Of a stretch of 64,000 nt of DNA, positions 23,649 through 64,000 are shown piece by piece. This DNA comes from Mytilus californianus (taxonomy: Eukaryota): positions 6,138,001 to 6,202,000 of the forward strand of contig NW_026262604.1 of the NCBI RefSeq assembly GCF_021869535.1, in the 5' to 3' direction. Made by a program: the position numbers and the translations under genes. Positions within the stretch are counted from its first letter, which is position 1, and each line of letters starts with the position of its first letter. The notes beneath the pieces were generated by a model. That model saw nothing but the letters and a program-made list of their open reading frames with translations, was not told the origin of the DNA and made no database searches.

Positions 23649-25263
23649 GGTGTCTTCCTGCTATTCCTACATTTTATAAATACATATTCCTTCTATTCCT
23701 ACAAACAAAGAACAATAGATTTTGGTATATGGTGTTTTGTTGTTTTAGTAATTTAAATTTAATTAAAATACAGGTAAGTACAGGTAATCTGGAAAGGATG
23801 ATTACAATGATAAAAATAAATAGAAAAAAAGTAGATGCATTGCAAAGAGTATAGAACAGAAAATTCCCCAAAATGAATGTATTTCTGTTAAAAATGTTTT
23901 TAAAATAATAAAACCCTAATACGACTTTAATTTTAAAGTTTAATAGATATTTTAAGGGGATATTATATTGTCCGGTGAACTTTATAAATTTTGACTATGT
24001 TCTAATTAAATGGCGTTGTTGCTAGAATAAATGCTACAAAAGTATTATTATTTTTATTATTATCATCAAGGATTTGTAAATCTATCTATACAGATCCTTG
24101 TTATCATTGATGTTTTGGGTGGCGGCTTTCCCGGTATGGATCTTGCGCCCTACTAAACACTCATTGTGTGAAAAATTAAAATTTCCTTAGTGTTTCGTAT
24201 TGTTTCATGTGAGTTCTGGAGTTGTGAAGTCCTTACTTTGTTGTGAAGTTGTACTCATGTAAAATGATACAGGATTTTGAAATATTGATGTTGACATTGC
24301 ATGATGAATATAAGCTAATTATAATTGCTTTGATTTGAGTGGTAATAGTAGCCGGTAAATGAAATAAATAAAACTAGATAAATGAATGAATCTCAATGTC
24401 CATCAGGAAGATTGAGATTATATATTGCTACCCGATAGCCCAGTGTCAATTATATATATATAAAAAAAAGCCAAAGCTATATATGCGTCAAATAAGTAAA
24501 ACATTGATAAATAAATAATAAATTTATGTTACATTTCTTTAACCTACTTTGAGCTTAGCAAAAAATATTATATCAGAAATTGCCATAGATACCAAGAGAC
24601 CAGTTTGATTTGTAGTCCCCTGTTCAGTGAGGATCGTCGGGGTGATATGTATTGACCTCTACTGCCCTCACTGACTACTGGGTAGAAAGTAATTGAAGTA
24701 TCTGGAACAACTATGCAACAGATGGCCCAAGAACTACAAATCATCTAGAGGGCTGGTACAGCAGATTAAAGAAATTGATCAAGGCACACCACCCAAACAT
24801 ATTTAGTCTTGTTAAGCTGCTGAGGCATGAAGAGGCGATTCATGCGTGCAAACTACTCCAATATGCAGCAGGAGGGAAGCATGTACCAAGGCTAATTATT
24901 ATTTTTCATGAACATGATGAAATAAATAAAATGGAACTTTACCGATCTTTTTTTTATTATTGTCCTCGGTGATATAAGAGGAAACACACATAATACAACA
25001 GTACAAAAATAGACAAGAATAAATATTTCTTTCAATAATTTGTATCGTTTTATACTGTTAGTACAAAATGTACACTAAAATTGCACATGAATTGAAAACT
25101 AAAAGGTATTTCATTTAAATTTACCCGAAGTTAATTAGCTTCATGTTTTTACAACCTAATCCGATTTAGTCCCATGTTTGTACAAGCATTCCTCCTATTC
25201 CTACATGGTTTTCTTACATTTTACATACCGAATTATCAAATGTAGGAATAGCAGGAATAAACC
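23649..25263 (+). mobile_element. Internally deleted Mutator-like element (MULE)
   Basis: ~26-bp TIR GGT(G/T)T(C/A)TTCCTGCTATTCCTACATTT with the 8-bp TSD GGCTAAAA. Carries a transposase remnant. Confidence 0.85.
24661..24900 (+). pseudogene. MULE transposase C-terminal fragment
   Basis: The frame reads DYWVESN*SIWNNYATDGPRTTNHLEGWYSRLKKLIKAHHPNIFSLVKLL, matching the MULE RTNNxxEGWHxxL...HPNI motif. One internal stop. Confidence 0.75.
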
Positions 25264-49040: not shown

Positions 49041-49917
49041 CAGGCATGGGGCGAATTACATTGCAATGTAATGCATTATATTACAATTACTTTGACCAAA
49101 CCATGCATTATATTACAATTACAATTACATGCATTTATCAAAGTAATGCATTATATTACAATTACTTTTGCAAAGTAATGCCTTGAATTACACATTACAT
49201 TTGAAAATTTTATTAAGTGAATAGAAAAACTGAACATTTTGAAAAACAACTAGAAGTCACAAAAGATTCTAGCATATGCAGAAACTGTTCCATGAATTGA
49301 ATATAAGTATACATTTAAAAAGTCTATTTAATTCGACTTTTACAATTTTAATTATTTTAACTTAATGTTAATTAACTTTTATAAATATACTTTTTGTTGT
49401 TTTTTTTTTTTTTTTTATTTTAAACGAAATATTTAATTACTGTGAATTACTCCCCTAATTATAAAATAAACATAGACCTTAATTAATGAACAATTGTTTA
49501 GTTGGTGAAAATATTGATTGTAAAACAAACTAATTAGTGTTTTATAACAAAGTTTAATTATCTTTTATTTAAGCAAGACAAGATATTCTTTGATCTTATG
49601 ACAACAATACAGTTATGCTTTTCAAATATCAATCTCTTTATGCAGGAAAATGTATGAAATAAGATGAAACAAAGAATGTATTCTAATGATTAACATATTC
49701 TTAGTTAATCAAGAAATCTTAAATTTGGTTTAGTTAAAACTCCAACAACATGTTAAAGATGTAGTATGTGAAAAAAGTAATGACATGTAATGCATGAAAT
49801 TACACAACTTTTTGCTAAAGTAATGCATTATATTACAATTACATGTAATGCACAAATTGCTGCATTACACATTACATGCAATTACTTGGAAAAATGTAAT
49901 GCATTACCCCATGCCTG
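49041..49917. mobile_element. hAT-type MITE
   Basis: TIR CAGGCATGGGG / CCCCATGCCTG with a perfect 8-bp TSD CTATACCG and GTAATGCATTA subterminal repeats. Confidence 0.9.
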
Positions 49918-53718: not shown

Positions 53719-54807
53719 CGGCTATATCCTGATTCTACCCCGTACATTAAATTTTCGGGGAAGAATGACAAGACCACTGATTGTACACAATTTCATTCAA
53801 GATGAATAAAAGAAAGATTTTGTTTTGAATTACATCTCTACTTCAAACTATTTTTACTTCTTTATTTTGTATTGAGTAGTAAAAAAATTTAATCCCCCTA
53901 CTATATTCTAATTGACATTATTTTTTCATTTTCCCAAAAAAAATCCTAGCCCCTTTTTTTCCTGAATATAACCCCAAAGAAAACCCTTTCGGACGCTTGG
54001 GTATATGTGTAAAAGAAAATAAATTAAATAATTTAAATAATTTATTTTACAACAAAATATCCTCCTTCCTTTTTAAAACACTGTCTTATATAACTGTTCC
54101 TGATTCTACCCTGTAAATTTCTTAACACTGTCATATATAACTGTTCCTGATTCTACCCCGTAAATTTCTTAAAACACTGTCTTATATAACTGTTCCTGAT
54201 TCTACCCCGTAAATTACTAAAAACACTGTCTCATATAACTGTTCCTGATTCTACCCTGTAAATTTCTTAAAACACTGTCTCATATATAACTGTTCCTGAT
54301 TCTACCCCATAAATTTCTTAAAACACTGTCTTATATAGTTGTTCCTGATTCTACCCCGTAAATTACTTAAAACACTGTTTTATATAACTGTTCCTGATTC
54401 TACCCTGTAAATTTCTTAAAACACTGTCTTATATAACTGTTCCTGATTCTACCCCGTAAATTTCTTAAAACACTGTCTTATATAACTGTTCCTGATTCAG
54501 CCCCGTAAATTACTTAAAACACTGACTTATAATTTACGGGGTAGATTCAGGAACAGTTATATGTTGTTTGTGCTGTATTTAGACCCCTCTACCAAGAAAT
54601 TTGTTTTGCATGCACACGTATAAAAATTGCGGTACGTTGTTTTCAATTTAGACTTGTTTATATATAGATTATATATATATAAATAATATAAAACCGGACC
54701 ACAGAAGTCTTTCCTTTATTCAAAATATTACTCCATCACGAATATTCATTGCCTGAAATGCTGATATGACATTCTACCCCGGTGGGGGTAAAATCAGGAT
54801 ATAGCCG
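53719..54807. mobile_element. TIR element with 6(-7)-bp TSD containing a ~49-bp TIR-derived minisatellite
   Basis: 23-bp TIR CGGCTATATCCTGATT(C/T)TACCCC with TSD GCAGGG. Nine direct units (54091-54530) plus one inverted unit (54531-54562) share TCCTGATTCTACCCCGTA with the TIR. Confidence 0.85.
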
Positions 54808-56201: not shown

Positions 56202-56365
56202 GTTTGTCACAAGGCTCACAAGCATATATATGTGAAATTTTAAGAGGAAATGATGTACAGAAGAGTGTTTTGAATACACAAGTATAACCAAAGGATAATT
56301 TACATTTAGCAATGAAAAAGGTAACATTGTGCAACAATTGGCTATTTTTATAAGCTTATAAGATC

Positions 56366-56398
56366 CAGGGACTTTCTATATAGTATAGAAAGTCCCTG
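56366..56398. mobile_element. 33-bp TIR-only palindrome with 7-bp TSD (P-element-like excision footprint, copy 1)
   Basis: TAAGATC|CAGGGACTTTCTATAT-AGTATAGAAAGTCCCTG|TAAGATC. Confidence 0.8.
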
Positions 56399-56409
56399 TA
56401 AGATCTTAT

Positions 56410-58530
56410 AAACCCTCGCGGACATGACTGATCTCAAATTTAGCAATTGCTTTAAAACAACTTCTTATAAAATTTGTAAAAAATATGACAATTTAATGAT
56501 AATAGGAGATGTGAATTTTAATAAGATATATGAACATAAAAGTTCATTTTTAATTGATACATGTGACATTTTTTATCTTTAAAATTTAGTTCAAAAAACT
56601 ACTTCTTAACAAATACCATATATGAACAAGAAATGATTGTAACAGGATGCTGTTACGAAGTCTCCCAAACGAAGCTCCCATAATTCGTAATTCCAAGGGT
56701 CGTCTGACATTGGGCAAAGTCCAGTGAAAATTGGTTTGGTAAAGTTATATGCAGTAGTGATGCCTGGGGACTAACCCTGTATATCATTCAAATCATCTTG
56801 GCATGACAAACCAGAATATATATGGTTTAGGGGTGGTGATCTCGACCACTTACAAGATACTAAAACATTGGGGGTGGGGGGAACCCCTGGGGACCGACCC
56901 TATACGTCATTCAAATGTTCGCGACATGACAAACAGGAATATATATGGTTTAGGGGTGGGGATCTCGACCATTTACAAGATATTAGAACATTGGGGGTGG
57001 GGGGAACCCCTGGGGACTGACCCAATACGTCATTCAAATGTTTGAGACATGACGAACAGGAATATATATGGTTTAGGGGTGGGGATCTCGACCATTTACA
57101 AGATATTAGAACTTTCTCAAATGGCAGGGGGTGGGGGATGGCCCCTGGGGACTAACCCTGTATATCATTCAAACCATCTTTGCATGACAAACCAGAATAT
57201 ATATGGTTTAGGGGTGGGGATCTCGACCACTTACAAGATACTAAAACATTGGGGGTGGGGGGAACCCCTGGAGACCGACCCTATACGTCATTCAAATGTT
57301 TGCGACATGACAAACAGGAATATATATGGTTTAGGGGTGGGGATCTCGACCATTTACAAGATATTAGAACATTGGGGGTGGGGGGAACCCCTGGGGACTG
57401 ACCCAATACGTCATTCAAATGTTTGAGACATGACGAACAGGAATATATATGGTTTAGGGGTGGGGATCTCGACCATTTACAAGATATTAGAACTTTCTCA
57501 AATGGCAGGGGGTGGGGGATGGCCCCTGGGGACTAACCCTGTATATCATTCAAACCATCTTTGCATGACAAACCAGAATATATATGGTTTAGGGGTGGGG
57601 ATCTTGACCACTTACAAGATATTAGAGCTTTCTTAAATGGCAGGGGGGGTGGTGACCCCTGGGGAATAACCCTGTATTTCATTTGATTTGCTTTATAATG
57701 ACAAACCAGAATATATATGGTTTAGGGTGGGGATCTCGACCATTTACAAGATATTAGAACTTTCTCAAATGGCAGGGGGTCGGGATGACCTCTTGGGACT
57801 AACCCTGTATATCTTTCAAATTATCTTAGCATGACAAACCAGAATATATATGGTTTAGGAGTGGGGATCTTGACCACTTACAAGATATTAGAACTTTCTT
57901 AAATGGCAGGGGGTGGGGGTGACCCCTGGGGACTAACCCTGTATATCATTCAAACCATCTTTGCATGACAAACCAGAATATATATGGTTTAGGGGTGGGG
58001 ATCTTGACCACTTACAAGATATTAGAACTTTCTTAAATGGCAGGGGTGGGGTGACCCCTGGGGACTAACCCTGTATATCATTCAAACCATCTTTGCATGA
58101 CAAACCAGAATATATATGGTTTAGGGGTGGGGATCTTGACCACTTACAAGATATTATGTTTTTCTTAAATGGCAGGGGGTGGGGTGACCCCTGGGACTAA
58201 CCCTCTATTTTATCTAATGTGCTTTATCATTTAGAACATTTTCAATTAAAAAGATTGTGTCTATCACAAATGGTTTTCAATTTATAATCATTTGAAAATT
58301 TAAAAAATAAAATCCCATAGGGTTCTATAGTAAAACCCTCCTTTCTTTTCGCCCCTCAAAGTACCCCTTTATAAACCCTATTGCACAAACAAAACCCTGA
58401 TTGCACCACTAGACATGTTAGTCTAACATATTGTGAAACCCTAAGTTAATCTGACTAGCGGTTTTGGAGAACGGGTGCGGACAAGTTCAAATTTAAAAGC
58501 GGCGGAAGAGGAAGAGGAAGATGAAGAAGA
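56410..58530 (+). mobile_element. HINE-type element with a G-rich 123-135-bp array including a 381-bp higher-order repeat
   Basis: Repeated GGGACTAACCCTGTATATCATTC..GGTTTAGGGGTGGGGATCTCGACC. The 381-bp period is visible in ORF starts 57049 and 57430. (GAA)n-type tail. Confidence 0.75.
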
Positions 58531-59545: not shown

Positions 59546-62153
59546 AAAGAACTGAAGTCAGCAGTCTTACCGTAACTACCATTGAGGCAAGTGAGGCAAT
59601 TGCCTAACTAAAATTTCGACACTGATTTTTTTGTATTTGTTTATGGTTATTGAATACGAAATATAATCATTTGTTGTTCTGTTTCAACCTTAATTTCTAC
59701 AACTTGTCATCGTTCCTTTTAAATTATTCTTCTCAAATATAACTCAGCATCTAAACGGGTGATCACGGGTGATGTTTCTCAATTTTAACCAGTTAACCTA
59801 GTAACGGTGATCATTGTGGATCTCTGTTTGAAAATAAGCTCTTGAAGAAAAAGGAAAAGCGATACTGAAGGTTAGGAACGAATAATTCTAGTAAACTAAC
59901 TGATGTTGTTTGTGTTAAGAGTTTGAGTATTGAAAATAACTTCATTGGAAATAATTCAAAAACTACAAAGAGCCCTATAAATAGTCTGACAAATCAAGTA
60001 CTGGGGCATCGCTCGGAAGCAATCCTGTCTGCGTAGTTATTTCTCCGTTTCACAAACTTTATTCACTATCTTTACATATAAACAAAACATAAATAATATG
60101 AAACCTGCATGGATTAGTTTTTATCCATGTTTCTTCAACCTTAAAAATTGAAAGGACATCCCGTCTTCAAATTTGACATTATTGAGGAACGGTTGGACCT
60201 TTAAAACGGAATTTTGGCTTTTCTAATTCGGGACTAAGGATTTTTGTGTCTTTATATTCGGGATTACCTGAAGACGAAGCATAGATGAAACAAACGAAGT
60301 GTACAACCCCGTATTTCATTTAATAGAGCCTCAGAATTTGCAGAAAGTAAAGAAAATGTCGGATTTTCTCGATTTTTTAGTTTTTGCGCCCCGTGTATGA
60401 TCGTATGCGCAGGTAATTTCATTATGTCATCAGAAAGTGAACAAAAATGTCGGATTCCAGCGACAAGGATTAAATAATTATTCTAATGACTGTAATAATT
60501 GTTTTGTTTTTTTTTGTTTTCAAGGTATCATACAAATTGATCATATTTTACTGGTTGTTCATCTCATTGAAAGAACTGCTTTTCTTCCGTTATTTTATTA
60601 ATTCGATTATTAGATTATTTATCAAAACACAATTTTAATAATAAAACACTTAACAGTGGCGGATCGGGATCCAGGGAGCGTAGATAGTGTACGTCCCCTA
60701 TCTGATCGCAAAAAGAATCATGTTTTTTTCACAAATTTTTATAGCCGATATTTATTCCTTTTTCTATGGTAATCCCCTTTTTTAATCGAAATTTAATTGA
60801 ATTTTTGCAAAAGAAATGGTACTACATTGTAGTATTACATTTTATTGTTTTTAGAACTGAAAGAAGAACTTTTAGTATTTTTTCCAAAATTAAGGGAACT
60901 CGTAATAATCCTATATAGTTTGAAAAAGGTTTCTTAAGATGGTACACATGATTTATTGCTTTTTGTTATAAAATGAAAACAAATGAAGATCTTGACCTTT
61001 TACGATTTTTTGTTTCCTAAATATTTCAGTGGCGGATACATTTAAAAAAAAAGGGTGGAGCTTCAGCCATGGAATAAAATGAAAATGAATGTGTTAGCTA
61101 AGCTCCGCCTTCTTTCCTTTGGATTCTAGTTGAGTTGCATATTCAATTAGCAAAGTATGGCACAACATCAAATTGCAGATAATATACCATGATGGTTTTC
61201 CCTCAACACACTCAAGTTTTAAGCAAATTATTTCATTAAAACATCAAAGGAAAACTCCAATTTATGTTACAAGAAAACATGGCTATAGAGACAAACCAGG
61301 AAAAAATATGCGAGACATTTAACCATTTCTTTGTTACTTTAGCGAAGAACATTGGAGATAACGCCATGCTGGACAACGTTGTCGATAAAAAAAAAGACTT
61401 CAAAGTAATGAAGCAATTATAAAAAATCATACAGATTTGTCATCATCAGCACTACATTTTCAACCAGTAAACGAAAATTTTGTTTTGAAACGAATAAATA
61501 AAATAAATATCAAGAAAGCAACAGGTATTGATGGAATATCACCAAAATTGTTTCACTATGCCAAATCTGTAGTTACGAAACCAATGACTGATCTTGTAAA
61601 TTTGTCATTGTCTACCTCAGTCTTCCCAGACTCACTTAAAACTGCCCAGGTGGCACCGATTCATAAAAAACCCCACTCCCAGTGCTCTTGAAAAAGGTAA
61701 TTACAGACCAGCGAGTGTGTTTCCTTCGATATCCAAAACTTTTTGCCGGAGGCAGCCATCGAGATGCAACTTTCGGAACAATTCAAAATTATATTTAATT
61801 GATTTCTTGCAGCATTTAGAGCAGGTTTTGGCTGTCAGTCCACTTTACTAAGAATAATCGAGGACTGGAAGAAACCCTTAGACAATGACAATTACCTAAC
61901 AATCTAAACTATCAACACTTAAATTCAGACCCATGAGAACCATGGCATTAGAAACTTTAAAAAATGTGACAAAATCCAGTCCAGAGTTCTTTCACAATAT
62001 ATATATATATACATTTTAAAGATAACTCATATAATTTAGATATAAACTCACATTTGATTTACCAAAACCTAGGACAACAATGTATGGCAAAAGGAGTCAG
62101 TTTAGCTTTAAGACAGCAAAGTTGTGGAACTCCCTGCCTAACCATGCACGGCC

Positions 62154-63280
62154 CCCTTACAGAACTGAAATGTTTGCTGCAGATCTGCTGCAAACTTGCT
62201 GCAGGTCTGCTGCAAACGAAAAGCTTGCAGGAACCCTTTCAATAATGTTTGCAGATAATTGCAGCTAGCTGCAAACCTCCTGCAAACATTGCAGCTTTTT
62301 GCTGCAAGCTTGCGGCAAGTTTGCAGAAACAAAAATGTTTGCAGTAAGGTTGCAGGAAAAACTAGAATATAAGGGATGTTCGCAGCTAGATTGCAGAAAT
62401 CTTTGACAATTCTATATGTTTGCAAGAACATTGCAAGAACTACATAACATGACTGAGCATGCCTATTGGTAACTTCCTGATAGATAGAGATTTGAAATTT
62501 GAAAATGTTGATGGTGTTTGAGTCATGTTATATATTAGTGTTCACGGACGCATTTAAGTTTGGAATTAAAAGTTTAGTTTTCAAAGACATTATTTGTAAG
62601 TAAAAATTCTTCATAGAAGTACTAGTGTAATTTATAAAATTTTAGATATTCACGCATGCAATTTCATTTGAGCATGCATGTACAATGTACTTGAACAACA
62701 AATAAAAACCTTTAAACTAGTTTTCAAAGGTATTAACTTATGCTATGATAATTTTGCAAATGATAAAGTATTTGGATTATTGTATGTATGTATGTAACAT
62801 ATTTTTTTTCAGAATTTGCTGTGTAATATTAATAATGTGATGTGTACCAACAGTCAACATGACATTGGTTAATTGTGTAACGTATGTAGTTCCTGCAAGT
62901 TTGCAGCAAACACACAGGAGAAAGATTAATTTGAATATAAATGTTTGCCGCAGGTCTGCAGCAAACACGCAGCAGGTCTGCAGCAAACACGCAGGAGAAA
63001 AATTAATTTGCATAAAATGTTTGCAACAGGTCTGCAGCAAACACTCATTTGCATATTAATGTTTGCAGCAGGTCTGCAGCAAACTCTCATTTGCATATTA
63101 ATGTTTGCAGCAGGTCTGCAGCAAACACTCATTTGCATTGTAAATTGTTTGCGGCAGACCTGCAGCGTATTTGCAGCAAACATGCCGCAAATACAGACTC
63201 TATGTTTGCTGCAAGTCTGCAGCAAGTTCGCAGCAGACTTGCAGCAAATGTTTGCAGGAGGCTAATTTTTTCAGTAAGGG
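62154..63280. mobile_element. CMC/EnSpm-like MITE inserted into the LINE remnant
   Basis: Termini CCCTTAC(A/T)GAA / TTCAGTAAGGG with a 2-bp TSD CC. Dense TTTGCTGCAG / CTGCAGCAAAC subterminal repeats. Confidence 0.85.
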
Positions 63281-63744
63281 CCGGAGCCTCACAACTTTGG
63301 AACAGTTTTAATATTTTCATGATTTCAACATAGTGTTCTTCAGAAGACTGCTTTTGTAGCTCATGTACACAATAACTTTGCTGTCTCACAGCTGAAATCT
63401 TCTAGCCCGCCAGTGTTCTGTTTCATGATTGTTTGCTTTTGTTTTATTTATTTGCTATAGCTTTTGTCTTTGTGCCAGTTAAAGTAAAACATGTCTTTTC
63501 TTTTCTTTTTAGCTTGCTTGCATTTATTTATGCATGTTTGCTTAGCTATTATATATATTATGCATACATATGTTTTATTTGTATATATGTAGACAGGCTG
63601 TCAAATGATCTCAAATGTGCTTATAATTTGTTATTTGTGGGTTTTTTTTTTTAATATCTAGTTGGTTCAGAGCTCTACAGAGCTCATGATTACTGTGCTA
63701 AATTATACATATCATGCCGACTCTCAATAAAATCTACTTACTAC

Positions 63745-63778
63745 CAGGGACTTTCTATACTAGTATAGAAAGTCCCTG
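63745..63778. mobile_element. 34-bp perfect palindrome (17+17) with 7-bp TSD (P-element-like excision footprint, copy 2)
   Basis: TTACTAC|CAGGGACTTTCTATACT-AGTATAGAAAGTCCCTG|TTACTAT (TSD matches 6 of 7). Confidence 0.8.
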
Positions 63779-64000
63779 TTACTATACTTACTTATTTCTT
63801 ACTTACATTTAGTAAAGGAAACACTATTGTTAACTTTGTGCTCCATAGGTACATTTATTTAAAATTGATTATCGCCCTTCAACGGAATATGTAGATTGTC
63901 GCGCATCATTGCAAAGCAAAGAACTTTGAACTGCTTGAAGGTTTGTTAATTAATTAATATCATTGATTTTATAAATAGAAATAAGATGTGGTTCGAGTGC

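What the first reader, a model, noticed from the sequence alone, without database searches (positions are those of the whole stretch)
63738..63785. P-element-type excision footprint, copy 2: exact 17+17-bp perfect palindrome
Seen: TTACTAC-[CAGGGACTTTCTATACT|AGTATAGAAAGTCCCTG]-TTACTAT within a LINE tail. The arm length equals the 17-nt overhang known for P transposase. The junction differs by one base from copy 1, as expected for independent repair events. Two scars in 7.4 kb imply a high genome-wide density and a past burst of insertion and excision (possibly local hopping). Such perfect AT-centred palindromes could also extrude cruciforms.
Basis: partly seen in the sequence, partly recalled or inferred. 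Interest (0 to 1): 0.75.

Follow-up and report, generated by a model that had tools for sequence, protein, structure and literature searches.

The report
Transposon excision scar in mussel DNA
This 34-letter perfect palindrome between two copies of a 7-letter target is most likely the scar left when a cut-and-paste jumping gene, with a fruit-fly-P-element-like staggered cut, left this spot in a mussel chromosome; the scar is recent, since another mussel of the same species lacks it.

Summary
Window 63745-63778 is an exact 17+17 nt palindrome (arm CAGGGACTTTCTATACT) flanked by TTACTAC / TTACTAT. A second copy at 56366-56398 (33 nt) has a perfect 7-bp flank repeat and unrelated outer flanks. They are the only long non-simple perfect palindromes in the 64 kb.

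Contigs from four public runs show:
- The palindrome is a dispersed repeat in three species labels, bounded exactly at 63745 and 63778.
- Its listed variants are all indels at its centre.
- This site is polymorphic: one individual of the same species, and a contig of a second species, lack the palindrome plus about one flank copy.

The anatomy (target duplication, TIR stub, inverted TIR stub, target duplication) matches published Drosophila P-element donor-site junctions. A 7-bp duplication fits the P superfamily (Galileo).

Best reading, at 0.6: an excision scar of a long-stagger, P-type transposon.

- The stub can reach 18-20 nt, so the cut need not be exactly 17 nt.
- The family has only about 100-200 copies per genome, so two scars 7.4 kb apart are a local cluster, not a sign of high density.

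The parent element was not found, so P membership is untested, and a TIR-only mini-transposon is not excluded. Earlier follow-ups of this scan reached the same scar reading for like palindromes on other DNA of this genome (s1-287925, s1-333284).

The parts
63738..63744 (.). Left copy of the 7-bp target-site duplication (TTACTAC)
   Evidence: The empty allele in run X3 keeps a single copy of this motif (joint 63741>63785).
63745..63761 (+). Left TIR stub, transposon end positions 1-17 (CAGGGACTTTCTATACT)
   Evidence: Loose ends of many different contigs start exactly before 63743-63745 (table 7).
63762..63778 (-). Right TIR stub, exact reverse complement of the left stub. The junction centre is ACTAGT, with the self-complementary TA at 63761-63762.
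   Evidence: Loose ends start exactly behind 63778-63780. Centre indel variants map to 63758-63761 (table 4).
63779..63787 (.). Right copy of the target duplication. It reads TTACTAT (6/7). Compared with the empty allele it reads TTACTA+TA+C, a perfect copy with a 2-bp indel in simple sequence.
   Evidence: The X3 contig skips 43 bp, which is 34 + 9, where 41 was expected (tables 5 and 8, record 22).
56359..56405 (.). Sister scar (copy 1). TAAGATC, then a 33-nt palindrome at 56366-56398 (15 + 18 nt of the same TIR, or the 34-mer minus one C), then TAAGATC.
61389..62265 (+). Degenerate LINE coding remnants upstream of the site (RT-start motifs and a C-terminal piece). This is context only.
   Evidence: ORF translations. 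Recognised by eye from motifs; no Pfam hit at E<=0.01.
63653..63715 (.). High-copy repeat segment about 30 bp upstream of the scar, probably the conserved 3' end of the LINE. This is context only.
   Evidence: Summed contig depth is about 2800 against about 22 for single-copy flanks in X1 (table 2).

Best explanation
The palindrome is a donor-site scar of a cut-and-paste DNA transposon whose ends begin CAGGGACTTTCTATACTA.

Proposed sequence of events (inferred unless marked otherwise):
1. The element inserted here and duplicated 7 bp of target.
2. Its transposase later cut the transferred strands at the element/target boundary. It cut the other strands about 17-20 nt inside each inverted repeat, as P transposase does. 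Each chromosomal end was left with a long 3' single-stranded tail made of the TIR tip.
3. Host end joining paired the two identical tails at their self-complementary TA (TIR positions 17-18), filled the gaps and ligated. The result is 16 + TA + 16, a 34-bp perfect palindrome between the two target copies.
4. The same element, or a sister copy, left a second scar 7.4 kb away after a local hop. There the join differs by one base.

Shown here: the anatomy, the 7-bp duplication, the independent sites, the dispersed multi-species family, the centre-only variation, and the empty allele.
Inferred: the staggered cut, the end-joining route, and the P-type enzyme.
For: (1) The palindrome is exact, with 7-bp flank repeats at two unrelated sites.
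(2) In one search, depth on 63737-63778 is 10 to several hundred times the flank depth in all four runs. Loose ends begin exactly at 63743-63745 and at 63778-63780, with consensus agreement of only 0.41-0.56. The 34-mer alone is therefore the repeated unit, at many different loci, in three species labels.
(3) In one search, tables 3-4, no substitution inside 63745-63778 is listed. Listed indels all sit at 63758-63761: -3 (31 nt, in both orientations, several contigs per run), +1 (35 nt, 18+17) and +5 (39 nt). Every variant, and window copy 1 (15+18), can be written as two stubs of one TIR of differing length. This is a junction spectrum, not drift of a copied unit.
(4) In one search, tables 5 and 8, an X3 contig (same species, another sample, 105 nt on the shorter side) joins 63741 to 63785 and so lacks the palindrome plus one flank copy. 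An X7 contig (a second species) lacks it too. X1 carries it with 0 mismatches. The event is therefore an insertion-derived, recent polymorphism.
(5) Published P{wa} junctions have the same layout. Their commonest tip joins are perfect palindromes made at a self-complementary AT or TA near the tail's 3' end (PMC2895639 Table 1). P transposase cuts 17 nt inside the TIR (PMC7776569).
(6) A 7-bp duplication is the rule for the P-superfamily element Galileo (PMC4168063).
(7) Depth over single-copy depth gives about 130-210 copies in this species. The chance expectation of a second copy within 7.4 kb is about 0.002. This clustering fits a trail of local hops.
(8) Inference: an enzyme that cuts 17-18 nt inside each end would cut a 34-bp unit through its centre, so such a unit could not move as one piece.
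Against: - No parent element with these ends, and no P-type (THAP / RNase H / GTP-binding) transposase, could be found or reached. Assignment to the P superfamily therefore rests on scar geometry and the 7-bp duplication alone.
- The terminus CAGGGA also resembles hAT ends such as Ac (own knowledge), whereas the Drosophila P end is CATGATG.
- Stubs of 18-20 nt exceed the 17 nt of Drosophila P.
- The 34-nt form dominates strongly, especially in species C. This is more uniform than the Drosophila junction spectrum and would also fit a copied unit.
- No allele carrying a full element at this site was seen.
- The skipped stretch is 43 bp, not 41 bp.
- Copy numbers come from summed contig depth, which the tool itself warns is not a copy number.
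Confidence: 0.6

Rival explanations
1. TIR-only mini-transposon. The 34-bp palindrome is itself a mobile unit, two fused terminal repeats and nothing else. A transposase supplied in trans moves it and makes a 7-bp duplication at each new site. The 31-, 33-, 35- and 39-nt forms are mutated subfamilies.
For: It has TIRs plus a target duplication, dispersed copies with different flanks in three species, and a presence/absence polymorphism with an empty site. The 34-nt form strongly predominates, most of all in species C. No longer relative was seen in the window.
Against: At 34 bp it would be about half the size of the smallest MITEs I know of (about 60 bp, own knowledge). Listed variation is confined to the centre and is fully explained by differing stub lengths. 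The same 31-nt form recurs in several contigs, in both orientations, in three species. The two neighbouring window copies differ exactly at the junction. If the enzyme is P-type, a 34-bp unit would be cut through its middle (inference from PMC7776569).
Confidence: 0.2
2. Extreme internal-deletion derivative. After excision of an element of any superfamily, gap repair copied in only the first few nucleotides from each end of the sister copy before the ends were joined. The stubs then reflect aborted synthesis and not a staggered cut.
For: Incomplete synthesis followed by end joining is the commonest outcome of P{wa} repair in wild-type flies (PMC2895639). Stubs of 18-20 nt, longer than 17, would be easy to explain.
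Against: Aborted synthesis should give a broad range of retained lengths. Here all forms seen fall between 15 and 20 nt per side and most are exactly 17. The junction sits on a self-complementary TA, as in the tail-tip joins of flies.
Confidence: 0.12
3. Chance palindrome, assembly artefact, or internal part of a larger repeat such as the LINE.
For: The site lies in repeat-rich, simple sequence next to a high-copy segment (table 2).
Against: Chance expectation is about 0.16 for the 15-mer, against 4 observed. Independent short-read contigs from X1 reproduce the sequence with 0 mismatches (records 6 and 8). The flanks of the two copies are unrelated. The repeat unit ends exactly at the palindrome edges (table 7).
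Confidence: 0.02

Closest known systems
Donor-site end-joining junctions ('footprints') of the Drosophila melanogaster P element (Beall and Rio 1997 as cited in PMC7776569; junction tables in PMC2895639)
   Same: The layout is target duplication, up to about 17 nt of the TIR tip, an optional filler, up to about 17 nt of the inverted tip, then target duplication. The favoured joins are perfect palindromes made at a self-complementary dinucleotide near the tail tip. Variation is confined to the junction.
   Different: Here the duplication is 7 bp, not 8 bp. The end sequence is different. Stubs reach 18-20 nt. One junction form dominates. These are natural, heritable, polymorphic scars forming a family of about 100 or more copies in wild mussels, not events recovered in a laboratory cross. 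The enzyme is unknown.
Galileo and other P-superfamily elements with 7-bp duplications (PMC4168063, PMC2775673)
   Same: The target duplication is 7 bp, and transposition is cut-and-paste with a P-type transposase.
   Different: Galileo has very long TIRs and is known as whole elements. No scar family is described in the papers I read. The mussel target 7-mers (TTACTAC, TAAGATC) do not match the GTANTAC preference.
MITEs, including the P-derived BuT5 (PMC3698922) and very short families such as Microuli (about 60 bp, own knowledge)
   Same: They are non-coding, have TIRs plus a target duplication, and are dispersed with presence/absence polymorphism.
   Different: This unit has no internal sequence at all and is only 34 bp. 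Its variation is at the junction only. MITEs are copied units, whereas this is more likely what is left behind.
hAT / Transib / MULE excision footprints (PMC5499845)
   Same: They are scars of cut-and-paste excision and can contain short palindromes.
   Different: Those palindromes derive from the flanking DNA through hairpin opening, so they differ at every site. Here the same transposon-derived arms occur at all sites. hAT also makes 8-bp duplications.

Membership tests
P-type (long-stagger) excision scar | A short direct repeat of target DNA (7-8 bp in the P superfamily) on both sides | tested here: met
   Copy 1 has TAAGATC 7/7. Copy 2 has TTACTAC/TTACTAT, 6/7. The empty allele holds a single copy. 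An 8-bp reading fails for both copies.
P-type (long-stagger) excision scar | Only the outermost nucleotides of both transposon ends are retained, in inverted orientation, each no longer than the stagger (17 nt in Drosophila P) | tested here: inconclusive
   The stubs here are 17+17. The family forms are 15+16, 15+18, 18+17 and 18+3+18 (or 20+19). The lengths cluster tightly at 15-20 nt, but some exceed 17, so the stagger would have to be 18 nt or more in this enzyme.
P-type (long-stagger) excision scar | Independent events differ at the junction (microhomology, small deletions, filler) while the outer stub sequence is constant | tested here: met
   All listed variants are indels at 63758-63761, and no substitutions are listed in the arms (tables 3-4). 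The two window copies differ by one central base. This matches Drosophila Tables 1-3.
P-type (long-stagger) excision scar | A parent element with the same ends that encodes a P-type transposase (THAP, RNase H fold, GTP-binding insertion) | not testable with these tools
   None is present in the window. The public scans hold no mussel DNA with this end. Protein routes failed.
P-type (long-stagger) excision scar | The same site is occupied by a full element in another haplotype or individual | tested here: not met
   Four runs showed only scar-bearing (X1) and empty (X3, X7) contigs, and no loose end leading into an element. With four low-coverage contig sets this is weak negative evidence.
MITE / TIR-only mini-transposon | TIRs plus a target duplication, many dispersed copies, and empty sites | tested here: met
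MITE / TIR-only mini-transposon | Copies descend from one another, so variation is spread over the whole unit and defines subfamilies | tested here: not met
   Listed variation is at the centre only and is explained by stub length. Caveat: only variants reaching a 10% share in some run are listed.
hAT element or hAT footprint | An 8-bp duplication, with a footprint made from flanking DNA rather than from the TIR | tested here: not met
   The duplication is 7 bp, and identical transposon-derived arms occur at unrelated sites.

The most novel reading that the evidence does not exclude
There are two novel readings that the evidence does not exclude.
(a) The 34-bp palindrome is itself the smallest mobile DNA element known, a pure TIR pair moved in trans.
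(b) These scars are a natural, genome-wide read-out of an 18-nt-or-longer staggered cut by a mollusc P-like transposase whose tail tips end in a self-complementary TA. The donor break would then 'self-seal' into one stereotyped product, a feature that would lower the cost of excision to the host.
The probability below refers to either of the two being true in its strong form.
Probability: 0.25. Interest if true: 0.7.

Novelty: new member of a known kind. Interest (0 to 1): 0.5.

Why it matters
Germ-line excision of DNA transposons is rarely documented in wild animals. A family of datable, polymorphic scars would show that a cut-and-paste element has recently been moving in mussels. It would give its cleavage geometry without biochemistry, namely a long 3' stagger so far shown only for the Drosophila P element. 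It would also offer a natural spectrum of end-joining outcomes in a lophotrochozoan germ line. The pair of scars 7.4 kb apart would be a fossil record of local hopping. The result also warns annotators that very short 'TIR-only' repeats need not be mobile elements.

Tried and rejected
1. Larger-repeat hypothesis. The flanks of the two copies are unrelated, so it was rejected.
2. Relatives in public collections. The 15-mer in viral contigs and the 17-mer in metagenome contigs gave only single-arm hits inside microbial sequence. None had a second arm or a TIR-like continuation, so these are chance hits. The two-arm pattern in 185,579 bacterial and archaeal genomes gave 0 hits.
3. Reaching other assemblies of this locus. 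A nearby ORF and ten window ORFs are not in the protein collection.
4. Sampling mussel DNA through zinc-finger homologues. The search was swamped by fish and reptile zinc fingers, and no close mussel relative was returned. Given about one copy per 7 Mb, random sampling would have been futile anyway.
5. Seeding a P-transposase search from a THAP domain found in a hit. Only 17 candidates came back, all horseshoe-crab zinc-finger proteins.
6. Searching the window for a parent. There is no THAP signature, no P-like ORF among 174 stop-to-stop ORFs read by eye, and no further TIR match at up to 3 mismatches. A TIR+TSD scan found only unrelated elements with 8-bp duplications.
7. Literature search for the end sequence. 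All hits are NF-kappaB probe sequences, and none is a transposon. No paper in the library describes natural P-type scar families.

Full report
**Observation**

Window 63745-63778 is an exact 34-nt palindrome. The arm CAGGGACTTTCTATACT occupies 63745-63761 and its reverse complement occupies 63762-63778. It is flanked by TTACTAC (63738-63744) and TTACTAT (63779-63785).

The 15-nt end occurs four times in the window, against 0.16 expected. These four are the two arms here and the two arms of a 33-nt copy at 56366-56398. That copy has a perfect 7-bp flank repeat, TAAGATC.

A systematic scan found no other perfect, non-simple palindrome with arms of 12 nt or more in the 64 kb. The DNA outside the 7-mers is unrelated between the two copies. 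They are therefore independent insertion sites and not parts of one larger repeat. An 8-bp reading of the flank repeat fails for both copies.

**What public reads add**

I laid Logan contigs of four runs on 63380-64000. X1 and X3 are two samples of the window's species label. X7 and X17 carry two other species labels. Earlier notes of this scan call the genome the California mussel; I did not verify the name. There are four results.

1. Summed contig depth jumps on exactly the two bins that hold the palindrome.

| Run | Depth on the palindrome | Depth in single-copy flanks |
|---|---|---|
| X1 | about 4700 | about 22 |
| X3 | about 760 | about 6 |
| X7 | about 570 | about 42 |
| X17 | about 13,700 | about 22 |

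   - Dozens of contigs per run run off into unlike sequence exactly before 63743-63745 and behind 63778-63780.
   - The consensus agreement of these loose ends is only 0.41-0.56. The 34-mer alone is therefore the repeated unit, sitting at many different loci in three species labels.

2. Inside 63745-63778 no substitution is listed. Listed indels all lie at 63758-63761.
   - A 3-nt loss gives a 31-nt form. It is seen in both orientations and in several contigs per run.
   - A 1-nt gain gives a 35-nt form, 18+17.
   - A 5-nt gain gives a 39-nt form, 18+ACT+18 or 20+19.
   - Window copy 1 reads as 15+18.
   - All forms can be written as two stubs of one end sequence, CAGGGACTTTCTATACTA(AC), kept to different lengths.
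   - The abundant 39- and 35-nt forms are each a single high-depth contig per run. They are probably one event each that was later amplified inside a larger repeat, not many events.

3. The site is polymorphic.
   - X1 contigs carry the palindrome with no mismatch (records 6, 8).
   - An X3 contig (record 22, 305 nt, at least 105 nt on each side) joins 63741 to 63785. It thus lacks the palindrome and about one flank copy: 43 bp skipped where 41 was expected.
   - The 2-bp excess lies in TTAC-like simple sequence where this haplotype has other indels. Against this allele the right flank copy reads TTACTA+TA+C.
   - An X7 contig also lacks the palindrome (net 40 bp shorter, only 27 nt on the shorter side).

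4. Depth divided by single-copy depth gives rough copy numbers.
   - The estimates are about 130-210 copies in the window's species, about 14 in the second species and about 630 in the third.
   - Counts of flank contigs agree in order of magnitude.
   - With about 1.4 Gb of contigs, this is about one copy per 7 Mb.
   - The chance expectation of a second copy within 7.4 kb of a given one is therefore about 0.002.
   - The tool warns that summed depth is not a copy number, so these are order-of-magnitude figures.

**Comparison with the known mechanism**

P transposase cuts the transferred strand at the element boundary. It cuts the other strand 17 nt inside the inverted repeat, leaving 17-nt 3' tails (PMC7776569).

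Sequenced donor-site junctions after P{wa} excision have this layout: 8-bp target copy, up to 17 nt of the end, optional filler, up to 17 nt of the inverted end, then the target copy. The commonest tail-tip joins are perfect palindromes made by annealing at a self-complementary AT or TA close to the 3' tip (PMC2895639, Tables 1-3).

The mussel 34-mer has the same layout, and its centre is a self-complementary TA. It reads equally well as 17+17 or as 16+TA+16. The second reading, together with the 35-, 33- and 39-nt forms, implies tails of at least 18 nt.

A 7-bp duplication is the rule in the P-superfamily element Galileo (PMC4168063). Footprints of hAT, Transib and MULE elements are built from flanking DNA through hairpins (PMC5499845, listed; mechanism from its abstract and my own knowledge). 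They would therefore differ from site to site, unlike these.

**Most likely mechanism**

An element with these ends inserted and duplicated 7 bp of target. It was later excised by an enzyme with a long (17-20 nt) stagger, and the two identical tails were joined at their TA tips by host end joining. A further local hop and excision left the sister scar 7.4 kb away with a slightly different join.

- Shown: the anatomy, the independence of the two sites, family behaviour, centre-only variation, the empty allele and the clustering.
- Inferred: the stagger, the repair route and the enzyme family.

I put this reading at 0.6.

**Rivals**

- **TIR-only mini-transposon (0.2).** It fits the dispersed copies, the empty site and the strong predominance of the 34-nt form. 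It does not predict centre-only variation or the recurrent 31-nt form. It would be far smaller than any MITE I know. It could not be moved as one piece by an enzyme that cuts 17-18 nt inside each end.
- **Aborted gap-repair synthesis in any superfamily (0.12).** It would explain stubs longer than 17 nt, but it predicts a broad length range, which is not seen.
- **Chance, artefact or part of the LINE (0.02).** This is excluded.

**What remains open**

I could not find the parent element.
- The window holds no THAP signature, no P-like ORF and no further copy of the end.
- The viral, metagenome and prokaryote-genome collections hold no mussel DNA with this end.
- The window's ORFs are not in the protein collection.
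- Two protein searches led nowhere.

P-superfamily membership is therefore untested. It rests on scar geometry plus the 7-bp duplication, and the CAGGGA terminus would also suit a hAT end (own knowledge).

- The arm length does not pin the stagger at 17 nt.
- The genome-wide density is low, not high, so the two scars are a local cluster.
- The LINE context is plausible but unclassified.
- Cruciform formation is possible in principle (hairpin of -14.3 kcal/mol as single-stranded DNA) but untested.

**Earlier notes of this scan**

Follow-ups on other pieces of this genome (s1-287925, s1-333284) reached the same 'scar, not mini-transposon' reading for similar palindromes with 7-bp duplications. 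Another end family is noted in s1-333294. I used these as leads only. If several unrelated end sequences all give stubs of 17-19 nt, that would be strong support for a fixed stagger. I could not check those loci here.

**Verdict**

This is a real, recent, insertion-derived palindromic scar, most likely from a P-type cut-and-paste element. It is a new member of a known kind and of moderate interest. The decisive test is finding the parent element.

Noticed in passing
window 63747-63755 and 63768-63776 (also 56368-56376, 56388-56396): Each arm contains GGGACTTTC, nine of the ten bases of the classical NF-kappaB site GGGACTTTCC. All literature hits for the end sequence were kappaB probes. Each scar thus deposits two inverted near-kappaB motifs. 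This is probably incidental, or it could be a protein-binding part of the transposon end.
   Followed up: no
window 49041-49917: An 877-bp non-coding element with 11-nt perfect ends CAGGCATGGGG and a perfect 8-bp target duplication CTATACCG. It looks like a hAT-type MITE and is unrelated to the scar family.
   Followed up: partly
window 53720-54806: A 1087-bp element with about 23-nt inverted ends (GGCTATATCCTGATT...) and an 8-bp flank repeat GGCAGGGC. Its class is unknown.
   Followed up: no
window 24697-24969 (+): A 91-aa open frame containing TTNHLEGWYSRLKK, which resembles the catalytic-E motif region of MULE/IS256-type transposases (recognised by eye). It is probably a decayed Mutator-like transposase fragment.
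   Followed up: no
window 56760-57720: A tandem repeat of about 190-380 bp units lies just downstream of scar copy 1. It gives open frames on several frames and both strands, with repeated peptides such as MTNRNIYGLGVGISTIYKIL. The exact ORF at 57049-57426 is not in the protein collection.
   Followed up: no
window 62100-63300: A long array of short GCAGCAAAC/CTGCAGC-like units forms many overlapping direct and inverted repeats. It lies between the LINE coding remnant and the high-copy 3' segment.
   Followed up: no
window 63785-63879 in run X3; 63823-64000 in run X7: Haplotypes and species differ here by many small indels: 12 gap positions in 95 nt in X3, and two distinct X7 contigs with 11-16 substitutions (table 8). 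The region is highly polymorphic simple sequence.
   Followed up: no
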